Shown in pieces: positions 18,122-53,570 of a stretch of DNA of 64,000 nt. Below the pieces are notes generated by a model that saw only the letters and a program-made list of their open reading frames with translations, ran no database searches and was not told the origin of the DNA. Source of the DNA: Chrysemys picta bellii. Lineage: Eukaryota. Within the stretch, counting starts at the first letter, position 1. Each line of letters opens with the position of its first letter. The stretch spans positions 17,918,001 through 17,982,000 of the forward strand of contig NC_088812.1 of the NCBI RefSeq assembly GCF_011386835.1. Reading direction: 5' to 3'. The position numbers were made by a program, and so were the translations under genes.

Positions 18122-18269
18122 NNNNNNNNNNNNNNNNNNNNNNNNNNNNNNNNNNNNNNNNNNNNNNNNNNNNNNNNNNNNNNNNNNNNNNNNNNNNNNN
18201 NNNNNNNNNNNNNNNNNNNNNNNNNNNNNNNNNNNNNNNNNNNNNNNNNNNNNNNNNNNNNNNNNNNNN
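18122..18269. other. Assembly gap (148 N)
   Basis: N run. Confidence 1.
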
Positions 18270-29236: not shown

Positions 29237-29891
29237 ATGACGACTTCACTGATCCTGCATCCACGCTGGGCGGATACCTTTATGTACGTGTATGAGGAAA
29301 ACCCGAATGAAAATAACCAGAATAAAACCCCAGCCATGGAGGCGCTAAGTGGGAACTGCCCAGCGAGCCACTGCAGGGATATAATAACTTTGGGTCGCCA
29401 TTCCAGCACCATTGGGACTCACCAGGGTTCTGTCTACACGGATATACCCGCTCCGGAAGCTGCCAGGCAGTGCCCTCCGCCACCAGCTTCTTCCAACGCC
29501 ACGCTGGGCTACGGCTACCCCTTTGGAGGCAGCTATTATGGGTGCAGATTGTCTCATTCCCACAACGTGAACTTACAACAAAAACCTTGTTCCTACCACC
29601 CGGCAGAAAAGTACCCCGAACCCAGCAGTTCCATCCCCAGCGAAGAACTACCTTCAAGGGCCAAAGAGTTTGCTTTTTACCCCAGCTTTGCCAGCTCCTA
29701 CCAGGCGGTCCCTGGTTACTTGGACGTGTCAGTTGTGCCAGGTATTAGTGGCCACCCCGAGCCGAGGCATGACGCTTTGCTTCCCATGGAAGGATACCAG
29801 CACTGGGCTCTTTCCAATGGTTGGGATGGGCAGGTCTATTGCTCCAAAGAGCAGTCACAGTCTACCCATCTCTGGAAGTCACCTTTCCCAG
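29237..29891 (+). CDS. HOXC13: Homeobox protein Hox-C13, exon 1 (phase-1 donor CCAG|gtaggg, intron starts 29892)
   Basis: ORF 29237.. MTTSLILHPRWADTFMYVYEE...YGYPFGGSYYGCRLSHSHNVNLQQKPCSYHP.EKYPEP...EELPSRAKEFAFYPSFASSYQAVPGYLDVSVVPGISGHPEPRHDALLPMEGYQHWALSNGWDGQVYCSKEQSQSTHLWKSPFP matches the HOXC13 N-terminus I recall; GT donor follows SPFP+G. Confidence 0.97.
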
Positions 29892-31824
29892 GTAGGGTAT
29901 TCTGAGCTCCGGCATGCTTCTCTGCTTACTAACCGCCAGGTAAAAATCGCTTTGGAATGCCTTCTGTGCAGTACTATGTGTATGAACACGTACGGGTAAG
30001 AAGGTGAAGCAATCATGCTTAGATCAAAATACATACCGTGAGCTTGAGGTTGCTTTAAAAGTAAGTGTGTCAGTTTCCTTTCCTTTTTCTGTCTCCCCTG
30101 CGTCGCCCCACCCAGCTGGGTCTGCCTCTGTTCTTTTATGTTTTTTAAATTTTCTTTTTAGCTTCCACCCAAGTTTCCGAACGCAGGCAGCGTAAAAGTG
30201 CCGGCTCGCCTCCTAATCTTTCCCTAGAAATGTTAGATGGCTTGTAATGGTACAGTAAATCATGCTGCAATTACAGAAATTGGTGTCAAGTGACAAATGA
30301 ATCTTGTTAGGGGAATGGGGTGAGACAAACAAAAAACAGAGCAATGATTCCCCCTTCCTCTAGTTAGAAGTCTCGTATGAGTTACAGCGTGCAAAGCAAT
30401 CGGAAAGCTTATGAGTTTGGGAGAATCTCCTCCGCCTTGCTCTCTTGCTGCTTGGGAAATAAATATCACCGCCTCTTACAGGGCTCCTTCCTCGCAATTA
30501 ATATCAAGGCCTGGCGCTCTGAATGAATGCGCTGCAGTAAAGCAGAACTGAAGATTTTGTGCCCCACACCCAAAGAGCATTCATCTTGGAAATGTATGGG
30601 TACCTGAAGCCGGCTTTATTTCTCAGCAATGGTAACAGAGAGGCCAGAGAGGCAGCCAGAAAATAAAGTAGAATGATGTGGCATAATGCAGGGTTTTTTT
30701 TTAACCCGGTTGAATGAAGGAAGAAGGAGGGGGAATCTCCGAAATCCCTTTTAGAGATCGTTGGGTTTCAATGGCTCTTTTGGAAACATTGATTAAAATG
30801 CTTTCTTTTTCCTGTTTAGAACAACAACAAAAAATATCTAAGTACTGGTAGGGAAATAGCTGGCTAGCAGATTCTTCTCTTTCCTAGATATAGTATTTTG
30901 TGTGAAAACCTGATGGCAGAGATCCACTTGCCAAACCTGGAGAAAACTGAACTCTTTATAGATAACATTCAGGAGAGTGTAACCTTCTGGATATAAATAT
31001 GTGCGTGCTTTTTGAAGGCAGAGAGTCTACTCACCTATAAGTGATTTTTTTGGATGCTGGGTTCACTGATCCCCGTTTCATTTGTGGGCTGTACTGATAA
31101 ATTATGGAGAATTTCCATGGGCGGGGTGTGTGTGGGGGGGTTCCTATTACTGTATCTTTGGGCCTTTATAGAAGTCCTTAGTAGATGTTACTGGAGCTGT
31201 CATTCTTATAGCAAACAATAAAGAGAACAGCTGTGCAAAATGTTCGAGAAAGACGGTGTTGTGTTGTTGTTTTTTTAAATCCATTATTGTCAATTATAAC
31301 AATGGACTTTGGATACCTGCCTAAATTCGTGATGGAACGGAGTTTGCGCTGAATAGTCTGCGACTCTTGGTTTAGTGTCTTTGTCACCCTTACAGAGCTA
31401 AGGCGCCGTTTATCATCTCATATCTGGAATTCTTTTTTTAAATGATTGTGGTTTGCAAGTGCAAAGCCCGAATACGATTCATTACTGAGGTCTGGCAGCG
31501 AACAGCCTTAGAATAAGGCAAAAGTGACTATGCGAGCTCTGCACGCGTTCAGATTCTCATTGAATCTCTGGTATAATCGCAGGGGGTAATCTTTCTTAAT
31601 AGTTTGGTGCTACTCAAGAAAGGAGAGAACCAAGATAACATGTCACTTTTTTTTTTAAATGCATCAACCCAACCTGCAAATTAACAGCTGATGTCGAGCA
31701 AAGTCCAAGCTTTTTCAGATTGCAAATGGTACCCGCGCTGCAGAAGACAGGCGGTACAGAGTCCACAGCAAGGAACTATTTGTTTGTCCAAAGTGCTGCG
31801 ATCTATCGTGCTGAGCCATAAAAC

Positions 31825-31900
31825 TACTACCAGACAGCGGGGTACCTGCAGTCATTAATTATGAAATTAATGACTGCAGGTACCCCGCTGTCTGGTAGTA
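31825..31900. repeat. Perfect 36-bp inverted repeat with a 4-nt spacer in the HOXC13 intron
   Basis: tactaccagacagcggggtacctgcagtcattaatt-atga-aattaatgactgcaggtaccccgctgtctggtagta. Confidence 0.95.
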
Positions 31901-32227
31901 ATGGTAAAGCGAGATATTAAAGTTTACTGGAGGTTAAAAAAAAAAAGAAGAAGGGAGAAACTTTAAAACCACACTTAAAATTTACCTGGTATGAATGTCC
32001 ATTGGATTTGTATTGCATGATATTTTGTTAAATTAATTGATGCTCCTTGTTTATATGTGAAAACCCACCTAGAAAATATCTCCTGGAATACCAGCATTTT
32101 TCCCACGATAATCTATTGATATTCTTCTCAGTGAGTCAGTCCTCCTTCCCCTTTCTGTCTATCTTTCTCCTCCATCCGGTCCCAGGGAGTAGAACTATGT
32201 AACTGCTTTATCTGTCTCATCTTGCAG

Positions 32228-32484
32228 ATGTGGTACCTCTCCAGCCAGAAGTGAGCAGCTACCGTAGGGGCCGGAAGAAAAGGGTCCCCTACACGAAAAT
32301 CCAACTGAAAGAACTAGAAAAGGAGTATGCAGCCAGCAAATTCATTACCAAAGAGAAGCGAAGGAGAATTTCGGCTACCACCAACCTTTCTGAACGCCAA
32401 GTCACTATCTGGTTCCAGAACCGCAGGGTCAAAGAGAAAAAGGTAGTTAGCAAATCTAAGACACCTCACCTTCACGCTACCTGA
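32228..32484 (+). CDS. HOXC13: Homeobox protein Hox-C13, exon 2 (homeodomain); spliced CDS 912 nt, 303 aa
   Basis: Pyrimidine tract + ttgcag acceptor at 32226-32227; G+AT gives Asp, then [71 protein letters not shown]; TGA 32482-32484. Group-13 homeodomain; phase fits exon 1. Confidence 0.97.
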
Positions 32485-36293: not shown

Positions 36294-36465
36294 NNNNNNN
36301 NNNNNNNNNNNNNNNNNNNNNNNNNNNNNNNNNNNNNNNNNNNNNNNNNNNNNNNNNNNNNNNNNNNNNNNNNNNNNNNNNNNNNNNNNNNNNNNNNNNN
36401 NNNNNNNNNNNNNNNNNNNNNNNNNNNNNNNNNNNNNNNNNNNNNNNNNNNNNNNNNNNNNNNNN
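36294..36465. other. Assembly gap (172 N)
   Basis: N run. Confidence 1.
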
Positions 36466-53417: not shown

Positions 53418-53570
53418 NNNNNNNNNNNNNNNNNNNNNNNNNNNNNNNNNNNNNNNNNNNNNNNNNNNNNNNNNNNNNNNNNNNNNNNNNNNNNNNNNNN
53501 NNNNNNNNNNNNNNNNNNNNNNNNNNNNNNNNNNNNNNNNNNNNNNNNNNNNNNNNNNNNNNNNNNNNNN
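53418..53570. other. Assembly gap (153 N)
   Basis: N run. Confidence 1.

What the first reader, a model, noticed from the sequence alone, without database searches (positions are those of the whole stretch)
31825..31900. Perfect 36-bp stem, 4-nt loop inverted repeat in the HOXC13 intron
Seen: zero mismatches over 36 bp (76 nt total). It has no flanking TSD and no similarity to the other repeats in the window. It is bordered by GCCATAAAA (a Cdx/posterior-Hox-type motif) and has paired TCATTAATT/AATTAATGA homeodomain-type sites around the loop. Inference: possibilities are a very recent fold-back duplication, a lineage-specific pre-miRNA/endo-shRNA sized like a Drosha substrate and co-expressed with HOXC13, a cruciform-forming site, or a duplicated homeodomain site in an intronic enhancer. 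It lies about 330 nt upstream of the acceptor and could affect splicing.
Basis: partly seen in the sequence, partly recalled or inferred. Interest (0 to 1): 0.75.

Follow-up and report, generated by a model that had tools for sequence, protein, structure and literature searches.

The report
Template-switch hairpin in turtle HOXC13 intron
A single DNA-copying slip pasted a backwards copy of 40 neighbouring bases into the HOXC13 intron of one group of turtles, making a perfect 36-bp hairpin-forming palindrome that is real and inherited; it is a clean case of a known mutation type with no function shown.

Summary
Arms 31825-31860 and 31865-31900 are 100% complementary, the loop is ATGA, the repeat is unique in the window, and it lies 327 nt upstream of the HOXC13 exon-2 acceptor.

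It is not an artefact. Contigs from four other organism labels, in four studies, break exactly as a perfect 36-nt palindrome predicts at k=31, with zero differences. The arm unitig has twice the depth of the loop unitig, which rules out a high-copy MITE.

It is not very recent. The flanks of these organisms differ by up to 1.3%.

Orthologous introns of Chelonoidis, Chelydra, Emydura and Carettochelys lack the 5' arm. The 3' arm is ancestral. The loop ATGA is the reverse complement of the ancestral TCAT. One template-switch event that copied 40 nt backwards (four-point type 1-3-4-2) therefore explains the whole change.

The event hit a motif, TCATAATTAATGAG next to GCC(A/G)TAAA, that is identical in turtles and alligator. 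That motif is now flipped and sits 28 nt from its partner.

There is no Rfam family match, and the loop is too small for a canonical pri-miRNA. Small-RNA output and enhancer function could not be tested.

The scan has already reported similar template-switch hairpins elsewhere in this genome. Verdict: new member of a known kind, of modest interest.

The parts
31825..31860 (+). 5' arm: the new sequence, an inverted copy of the ancestral 3' arm; absent from four outgroup turtles
   Evidence: Present in contigs of organisms B-E.
31861..31864 (+). Loop ATGA: the reverse complement of the ancestral TCAT. It is the last 4 nt of the 40-nt inverted copy (the inverted spacer of a type 1-3-4-2 event).
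   Evidence: all outgroups carry TCAT directly before AATTAATGA (AATGAATGG in Carettochelys). Switch points p3/p4 are the same with all four references.
31865..31900 (+). 3' arm (X): ancestral sequence, continuous with the conserved right flank. In this lineage it carries G>C, C>G and +CCC relative to other turtles.
   Evidence: Alignment A1.
31824..31824 (+). Junction base C (outgroups have A or T here): the one base the single-event model leaves unexplained
   Evidence: equal-cost solutions all leave one mismatch at the left junction.
31815..31823 (+). GCCATAAAA, an ancestral posterior-Hox/Cdx-type motif (GCCGTAAAG in alligator). It was 1 nt from the TAAT-rich 14-mer and is now 28 nt from its flipped copy.
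   Evidence: Only 3 copies of this 9-mer in the window.
31852..31864 (-). Flipped copy of the ancestral 13-mer TCATAATTAATGA, which is conserved in turtles and alligator
29237..29891 (+). HOXC13 exon 1
29892..32227 (+). HOXC13 intron (GT...AG), host of the palindrome
   Evidence: protein alignments.
32228..32484 (+). HOXC13 exon 2 (homeodomain) with stop codon

Best explanation
The palindrome is a real, inherited, lineage-specific mutation made in one step by template switching during DNA synthesis.

The ancestral intron read L(...GCCATAAAAA) + TCAT + X(36 nt, AATTAATGA...GGTAGTA) + R(ATGG...). The growing strand left its template just before TCAT. It then copied the opposite strand backwards from the right end of X through TCAT, 40 nt in all, and returned to the original template at the first base of X. 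The product is L + rc(X) + ATGA + X + R: a perfect 36-bp inverted repeat whose 4-nt spacer is the inverted TCAT. This is four-point type 1-3-4-2, which calls for an inter-strand switch.

The event happened on the stem of a turtle clade, after its split from the Chelonoidis lineage and before the split of at least five present-day organism labels. It has been passed on unchanged since then.

Shown here: the structure, its reality, the polarity of the arms, the single-event fit and the phylogenetic bracket.

Inferred: it is most likely neutral or nearly so. As DNA it can extrude a cruciform. As RNA it is a very stable hairpin in the HOXC13 pre-mRNA that is removed with the intron. Its most plausible biological effect, if any, is that it rearranged a conserved GCCATAAA + TAAT-rich motif pair, flipping and half-duplicating the latter.
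For: -: Chelonoidis, Chelydra, Emydura and Carettochelys all lack the 5' arm but have TCAT + X + R.
- enumerating four-point solutions gives the same p3 (the T of TCAT) and p4 (p3+4) with every outgroup. Edit distance falls from 43 to 14 (Chelonoidis), 43 to 17 (Chelydra), 43 to 22 (Emydura) and 49 to 29 (Carettochelys). Much of what is left (10 of the 14 edits with Chelonoidis) is lineage differences in X, counted twice.
- A plain insertion would leave loop TCAT and so needs 4 extra substitutions; the observed loop is ATGA.
- the Chelonoidis ortholog is unstructured (z = 0.2), against z = -15 in the window.
- in runs X3, X9, X10 and X14 (organisms B-E, studies P2, P4, P5, P6) the left contig ends at 31854. 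A 64-nt unitig spans 31831-31894, a 36-nt unitig spans 31865-31900, and the right contig starts at 31871, all with 0 differences. This is the exact k=31 signature of a perfect 36-nt palindrome.
- arm/loop unitig depths are 65/32.5, 43/21.7, 19.5/9.5 and 5.8/2.4, a ratio of about 2 in every run. The arm therefore occurs only twice per genome.
- (PMC10710096): template switching makes perfect hairpins in one event; 31,007 new stems were found in primate genic regions.
- the scan noted other template-switch hairpins in this genome. These are leads, not support.
Against: - One junction base (C 31824) is not explained by the single event.
- No microhomology is visible at either switch point.
- X itself differs from the outgroups by G>C, C>G and +CCC. 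These changes must predate the event or have been homogenised afterwards, and I could not tell which.
- Neutrality is inferred, not shown. The palindrome stayed perfect in all five organism labels. With 19 variable sites in 825 flank nt, about 1.75 changes are expected in 76 nt, so P(0) is about 0.17. This is compatible with neutrality but does not prove it.
- The event sits in a motif conserved for the turtle-crocodilian distance, so an effect on regulation cannot be dismissed.
Confidence: 0.82

Rival explanations
1. The template switch rewired a functional cis-element. The conserved pair GCC(A/G)TAAA + TCATAATTAATGAG is a homeodomain (posterior Hox/Cdx plus TAAT-type) binding module in the HOXC13 intron. 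The event flipped the 13-mer, added a second half-site in inverted orientation and moved the two motifs 28 nt apart, changing HOXC13 regulation in this turtle clade.
For:: the 14-mer is identical in Chelonoidis, Chelydra, Emydura and Alligator at a collinear site, although the alligator intron is otherwise not alignable by blastn. GCCATAAAA is rare in the window, with 3 copies. The derived state is fixed and unchanged in five organism labels. There is precedent in yeast, where inverted-repeat expansion by template switching at TF sites changed GRE2 expression (PMC13100816).
Against: No binding, chromatin or reporter data exist. The whole intron is about 80% conserved among turtles, and this site does not stand out. 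The motif was not found in the lizard, kiwi or caecilian introns. No paper on a HOXC13 intronic enhancer was found. Motif assignments rest on general knowledge, not on a scan.
Confidence: 0.12
2. The hairpin is a young, clade-specific small-RNA gene (miRNA-like or endo-siRNA) processed from the HOXC13 intron and co-expressed with its host.
For: It lies in the sense strand of an intron, so it is transcribed with HOXC13. The stem is 36 bp, and about 35 bp is preferred (PMC10710096). Template-switch hairpins are a documented source of new intronic miRNAs. Hox clusters host miRNAs (general knowledge).
Against: The loop is 4 nt and predicted closed (P >= 0.82), against a preferred >=10 nt. No CNNC motif occurs in the 35 nt downstream (the motif's role is general knowledge). 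No Rfam family reaches gathering score, and the weak hits occur on both strands. The base rate is low: only 0.9% of miRNA-sized template-switch hairpins in primate genic regions are annotated miRNAs. No listed run is on record as RNA.
Confidence: 0.04
3. The same product arose during repair of a double-strand break (microhomology-mediated or break-induced synthesis with a template switch) rather than at a normal replication fork.
For: The four-point description makes no assumption about the process that switches templates. The untemplated junction base at 31824 and the lack of microhomology are as easily produced by repair synthesis.
Against: Nothing in the sequence separates the two processes. 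Short-range fork switching is the commoner explanation given for events of this size.
Confidence: 0.15
4. It is an assembly or read artefact (chimeric fold-back read), or a MITE or other transposon insertion.
For: Perfect arms and a short loop are what a fold-back read artefact or a young MITE would look like.
Against:: the same structure appears in short-read-derived contigs of four other organisms from four studies. The arm k-mers have only twice the depth of the loop k-mers; no other copy in the window and no TSD; the arm is local ancestral sequence, not foreign DNA.
Confidence: 0.01

Closest known systems
[quoted passage not shown]
   Same: A reverse-complement copy of adjacent sequence (40 nt) replaces 4 nt. 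[quoted passage not shown] A single event explains an insertion plus clustered substitutions. The outgroups show the unswitched state.
   Different: Nothing essential. The copy is long enough to give a 36-bp perfect stem. One junction base is untemplated. The host is a turtle rather than a primate.
Template-switch-born miRNA hairpins in primate introns (Monttinen, Frilander & Loytynoja 2023, PMC10710096)
   Same: A perfect stem of miRNA-like length, created in one step from unstructured sequence (z 0.2 to z -15), inside an intron of an expressed gene.
   Different: The apical loop is 4 nt rather than >=10 nt. There is no expression or processing evidence, and no family match. It shares the raw material, not shown gene status.
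Inverted-repeat expansion at transcription-factor sites by template switching (yeast GRE2; PMC13100816)
   Same: The inverted copy spans a likely TF-binding motif and creates a symmetric pair of half-sites.
   Different: Here the element is intronic in a vertebrate Hox gene, and its function is untested. The yeast case started from an existing imperfect inverted repeat.
Other template-switch hairpins noted by this scan in the same genome (s1-335672, TBC1D1 intron, 73-bp arms; s1-320879, 164-base copy in an old MITE)
   Same: The same mutation type, the same genome, and perfect arms.
   Different: Shorter arms here. The location is a Hox gene intron, on a motif conserved to alligator. It is shared by more related organisms.

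Membership tests
[quoted passage not shown] | The inserted fragment is the exact reverse complement of nearby reference sequence | tested here: met
   the 40-nt fragment equals rc(TCAT + X). All 36 arm positions are identical, and the loop ATGA equals rc(TCAT).
[quoted passage not shown] | One switch-and-return event explains the difference from the ancestral state better than a linear alignment. The criteria of PMC10710096 are an inverted fragment of >=15 nt that explains >=5 mismatches. | tested here: met
   edit distance falls from 43 to 14-22 with three outgroups and from 49 to 29 with the fourth. The 40-nt fragment explains a 36-nt gap plus 4 substitutions.
[quoted passage not shown] | Switch-point order is 1-3-4-2, with an inverted spacer between the repeat arms | tested here: met
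   p1 <= p3 < p4 < p2 in nearly all best solutions, and p3 and p4 are the same in all of them. One of the four equal-cost Chelydra solutions puts p1 one base past p3. The spacer TCAT became ATGA. Definition.
[quoted passage not shown] | The derived state is real in independent data, and the ancestral state is seen in outgroups | tested here: met
   four runs, four studies; four outgroup turtles.
Canonical animal pri-miRNA | Stem of about 35 bp | tested here: met
   36 bp perfect, plus a 5-bp extension after a bulge.
Canonical animal pri-miRNA | Unstructured apical loop of 10 nt or more | tested here: not met
   the loop is 4 nt, and the closing pairs have probability 0.82-1.0.
Canonical animal pri-miRNA | Match to a described miRNA family | tested here: not met
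   none at gathering score; the best hits score 45 bits against a threshold of 211 and 43 against 80, on both strands.
Canonical animal pri-miRNA | Discrete 21-23-nt reads with the Drosha/Dicer overhang signature | not testable with these tools
   One search lists no run on record as RNA.
MITE / transposon insertion | Target-site duplication and further copies in the genome | tested here: not met
   no TSD; no other copy in the window; arm k-mer depth is only twice the loop depth in all four runs.
Assembly fold-back artefact | Second arm absent from independent sequence data | tested here: not met
   both junctions and the loop are present in contigs of four other organisms.

The most novel reading that the evidence does not exclude
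The template-switch hairpin is a clade-specific small-RNA gene (miRNA-like or endo-siRNA) born inside the HOXC13 intron of one turtle lineage and expressed with its host. It would add a new Hox-cluster small RNA of known birth mechanism and approximate birth date.
Probability: 0.04. Interest if true: 0.6.

Novelty: new member of a known kind. Interest (0 to 1): 0.3.

Why it matters
The case is unusually clean. The ancestral state, the switch points, the inverted spacer and the phylogenetic bracket can all be read directly from the sequences. It shows how a single copying error creates a perfect 36-bp hairpin from unstructured sequence.

It also falls inside a developmental master gene, on a motif that stayed identical from turtles to alligator. 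This gives a natural experiment: the derived and ancestral arrangements of a candidate homeodomain-binding module can be compared between living turtles. If the hairpin turned out to yield small RNAs, it would be a dated birth of a Hox-cluster small-RNA gene.

On present evidence it is an ordinary, probably neutral structural mutation, and this genome holds others of the same kind.

Tried and rejected
- Rfam, whole window at gathering score: nothing. Permissive E-value search of 31600-32100: only generic hairpin hits, far below the thresholds and on both strands.
- Exact look-ups of the window's exon-1 ORF and exon-2 ORF: not on record, so closer relatives could not be fetched this way. Pelodiscus P0122 is not on record either.
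- Logan contig L006 is not a turtle ortholog of the intron: 86% identity in exon 1, and the intron does not align.
- Snap-back priming from the small ancestral quasi-palindrome TCAT..ATGA, or from the self-complementary AATT, was worked through by hand. Both predict palindromes centred on TAATT or AATT, not the observed ATGA centre. Rejected.
- The ancestral CCAT/ATGG inverted microhomology as the first switch point would delete AAAAC, which is present. Rejected.
- Selection for perfect pairing: 0 changes in 76 nt against about 1.75 expected gives P of about 0.17, which is not significant.
- The site as a stand-out conserved block among turtles: not so. The whole intron is about 0.8 identical. 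Only the comparison with alligator singles out the motif.
The N runs (18122-18269, 36294-36465, 53418-53570) were left alone.

Full report
**1. The observation**

The window holds a perfect inverted repeat. Its arms are 31825-31860 and 31865-31900, 36 nt each and 100% complementary, separated by ATGA. Allowing 3 mismatches, the arm matches nothing else in the 64 kb window, and shuffles give 0 matches.

As RNA, the 136-nt context folds at -84.5 kcal/mol (z = -15.4), and the 76 nt alone at -69.2 on either strand. As DNA the value is -45 kcal/mol (z = -18).

GCCATAAAA lies at 31815-31823. There is no target-site duplication.

The host is HOXC13:
- Exon 1 is 29237-29891 (HoxA13_N domain). Its best protein hit is Chelonoidis Hox-C13 at 97% identity.
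- The GT...AG intron is 29892-32227.
- Exon 2 is 32228-32484 (homeodomain).

The palindrome ends 327 nt before the acceptor.

**2. Is it real, and how widespread is it?**

I laid Logan contigs of four runs on 31300-32200. The runs carry four organism labels other than the likely source (B, C, D, E) and come from four studies. In every run:
- the left contig stops at 31854;
- a 64-nt unitig covers 31831-31894;
- a 36-nt unitig covers 31865-31900;
- the right contig starts at 31871;
- there are zero differences inside the palindrome.

This is exactly how a k=31 de Bruijn graph must break at a perfect 36-nt inverted repeat with a loop that is not self-complementary. It requires both junctions, the loop and the full 36-nt identity.

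The arm unitig has about twice the depth of the loop unitig in all four runs (65/32.5, 43/21.7, 19.5/9.5, 5.8/2.4). The arm sequence therefore occurs twice per genome and no more. This excludes a high-copy MITE.

In X3 and X10 both values are about half the flank depth. That fits loss of short reads over a hairpin. It does not fit heterozygosity, which would predict an arm depth of 1.5 times the flank.

The flanks carry 19 variable sites in 825 nt across the four runs. Organism E differs from the window at 11 sites (1.3%). So the palindrome is neither an artefact nor very recent. It predates the split of at least five organism labels.

About 1.75 changes are expected in 76 nt, so finding none has a probability near 0.17. 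Perfect preservation needs no selection.

**3. Origin**

Using the exon-1 translation, I found annotated Hox-C13 proteins and fetched their loci: Chelonoidis abingdonii (L001), Chelydra serpentina (L002), Emydura macquarii (L003), Carettochelys insculpta (L004) and Alligator mississippiensis (L005).

In alignment A1 all four turtles have the 3' arm, continuous with a conserved right flank and preceded by TCAT. None has the 5' arm. So:
- the ancestral form is L + TCAT + X + R;
- the window is L' + rc(X) + ATGA + X + R.

Because ATGA is the reverse complement of TCAT, the new material is a 40-nt reverse-complement copy of TCAT+X that replaced TCAT. A plain insertion of rc(X) would leave TCAT as the loop and would need four more substitutions.

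I enumerated four-point switch solutions against each outgroup. In every case p3 is the T of TCAT and p4 is four bases further on. Edit distance falls as follows:

| Outgroup | Linear alignment | Best template-switch solution |
|---|---|---|
| Chelonoidis | 43 | 14 |
| Chelydra | 43 | 17 |
| Emydura | 43 | 22 |
| Carettochelys | 49 | 29 |

Much of the remainder (10 of the 14 edits with Chelonoidis) is lineage differences inside X, counted once per arm.

The switch-point order is 1-3-4-2. [quoted passage not shown] It made up 23% of their human-chimp events, and they argue that spacer inversion requires an inter-strand switch (PMC5453318).

One base at the left junction (C 31824) is not explained, and I see no microhomology at either switch. 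I worked through simpler snap-back schemes from the small ancestral quasi-palindrome and from AATT. They predict different centres of symmetry, so I rejected them.

The Chelonoidis ortholog has no significant structure (z = 0.2). The stem therefore arose from unstructured sequence in one step.

**4. Dating**

Over 31300-32200, excluding the palindrome, the window differs from Chelonoidis at 7.1% of sites, from Chelydra at 8.0% and from Emydura at 16.5%. It differs from organism E at 1.3%.

The event lies on the stem between the split from the Chelonoidis lineage and a crown that is about one fifth as deep.

The distances suggest that the window comes from a testudinoid turtle outside Testudinidae. 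This is an inference; the species is not given, and the run labels are coded.

**5. What was hit**

Among turtles the whole intron is about 80% identical, and the site does not stand out. The alligator intron does not align by blastn. It nevertheless carries, at a collinear position, CTGAGCCGTAAAGC followed directly by the exact 14-mer TCATAATTAATGAG.

This 14-mer is identical in Chelonoidis, Chelydra, Emydura and Alligator. Carettochelys has two changes. I did not find it in the introns of a lizard, a kiwi or a caecilian.

The template switch therefore struck a motif pair kept for the turtle-crocodilian distance. In the derived state:
- the 13-mer survives only in flipped orientation (31852-31864, minus strand);
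- a second half-site, AATTAATGA, follows in direct orientation;
- GCCATAAAA, formerly 1 nt away, is now 28 nt away.

Reading these motifs as posterior-Hox/Cdx-type and TAAT-type homeodomain sites rests on general knowledge. No motif scan or binding data were available, and I found no paper on a HOXC13 intronic enhancer. A yeast study shows that template-switch expansion of inverted repeats at TF sites can change expression (PMC13100816).

**6. The small-RNA reading**

The hairpin is on the sense strand of an intron and has a stem of the preferred length. Against the reading:
- its loop is 4 nt and predicted closed, whereas pri-miRNAs prefer 10 nt or more (PMC10710096);
- no CNNC motif lies in the 35 nt downstream;
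- Rfam gives nothing at gathering score, and the permissive hits are generic, on both strands;
- in primates only 0.9% of miRNA-sized template-switch hairpins in genic regions are annotated miRNAs;
- no listed run is on record as RNA.

I put this reading at about 4%.

**7. Verdict**

The artefact and MITE readings are excluded. The miRNA and enhancer readings are unsupported but not excluded.

The best explanation is a single inter-strand template-switch mutation, fixed in a turtle clade and probably neutral. It makes a cruciform-capable palindrome in DNA and a very stable hairpin in the HOXC13 pre-mRNA intron.

The scan has already reported the same mutation type on other DNA of this genome (s1-335672, s1-320879). 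This is a new member of a known kind. It is of modest interest, chiefly because it rearranged a deeply conserved motif in a Hox gene.

**Limits**
- Only four runs could be laid, and all were contigs rather than raw reads.
- The exons were not joined into a spliced protein.
- The N stretches were left untouched.

Noticed in passing
window:31865-31900 compared with L001, L002, L003, L004; also window:31728-31745: Before or after the switch, the ancestral arm acquired G>C, C>G and +CCC in this lineage. This turned GTGCAC..GTACG into CTGCAG and GGTACC, two new palindromic hexamers. An older, conserved GGTACCCGCGCTGCAG lies about 90 nt upstream. I did not resolve whether this is chance or a trace of an earlier conversion or switch.
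   Followed up: partly
L005:5434-5461 (Alligator) and the orthologous turtle sites: GCC(A/G)TAAA plus the exact 14-mer TCATAATTAATGAG is kept between turtles and alligator in an intron that otherwise does not align. It may be a small conserved regulatory module of HOXC13. It was absent from the lizard, kiwi and caecilian introns sampled.
   Followed up: partly
window:10360-10529: An inverted repeat with 76-nt arms, 97% complementary, and an 18-nt spacer. It lies inside the stretch that another note (s1-330084) links to hammerhead-bearing repeats, so it is probably another Penelope-like element hairpin.
   Followed up: no
window:44418-44606: An inverted repeat with 91-nt arms, 96% complementary. 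This is the hairpin already treated by the scan as a Penelope-like element after HOXC12 (s1-329881).
   Followed up: no
L002:5001-5669 (Chelydra serpentina, protein P0128): The deposited Chelydra 'homeobox C13' model of 222 aa is only exon 1 read on into the intron, and it lacks the homeodomain exon. The window's own exon-1 ORF has the same length. It is a truncated gene model, not a truncated gene.
   Followed up: partly
window:31831-31900 in runs X3 and X10: The k-mer depth of the loop and arm unitigs is about half of what the flanks predict in two of the four runs. This probably reflects under-representation of short reads across a perfect hairpin. It is a practical warning for variant calling at such sites.
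   Followed up: no
window:31358-31490 in run X9: Two contigs of depth 12.3 and 7.8 cover the same 133 nt and differ at 3-4 sites and one inserted T. This points to heterozygosity upstream of the palindrome in that individual, while the palindrome itself is invariant.
   Followed up: no
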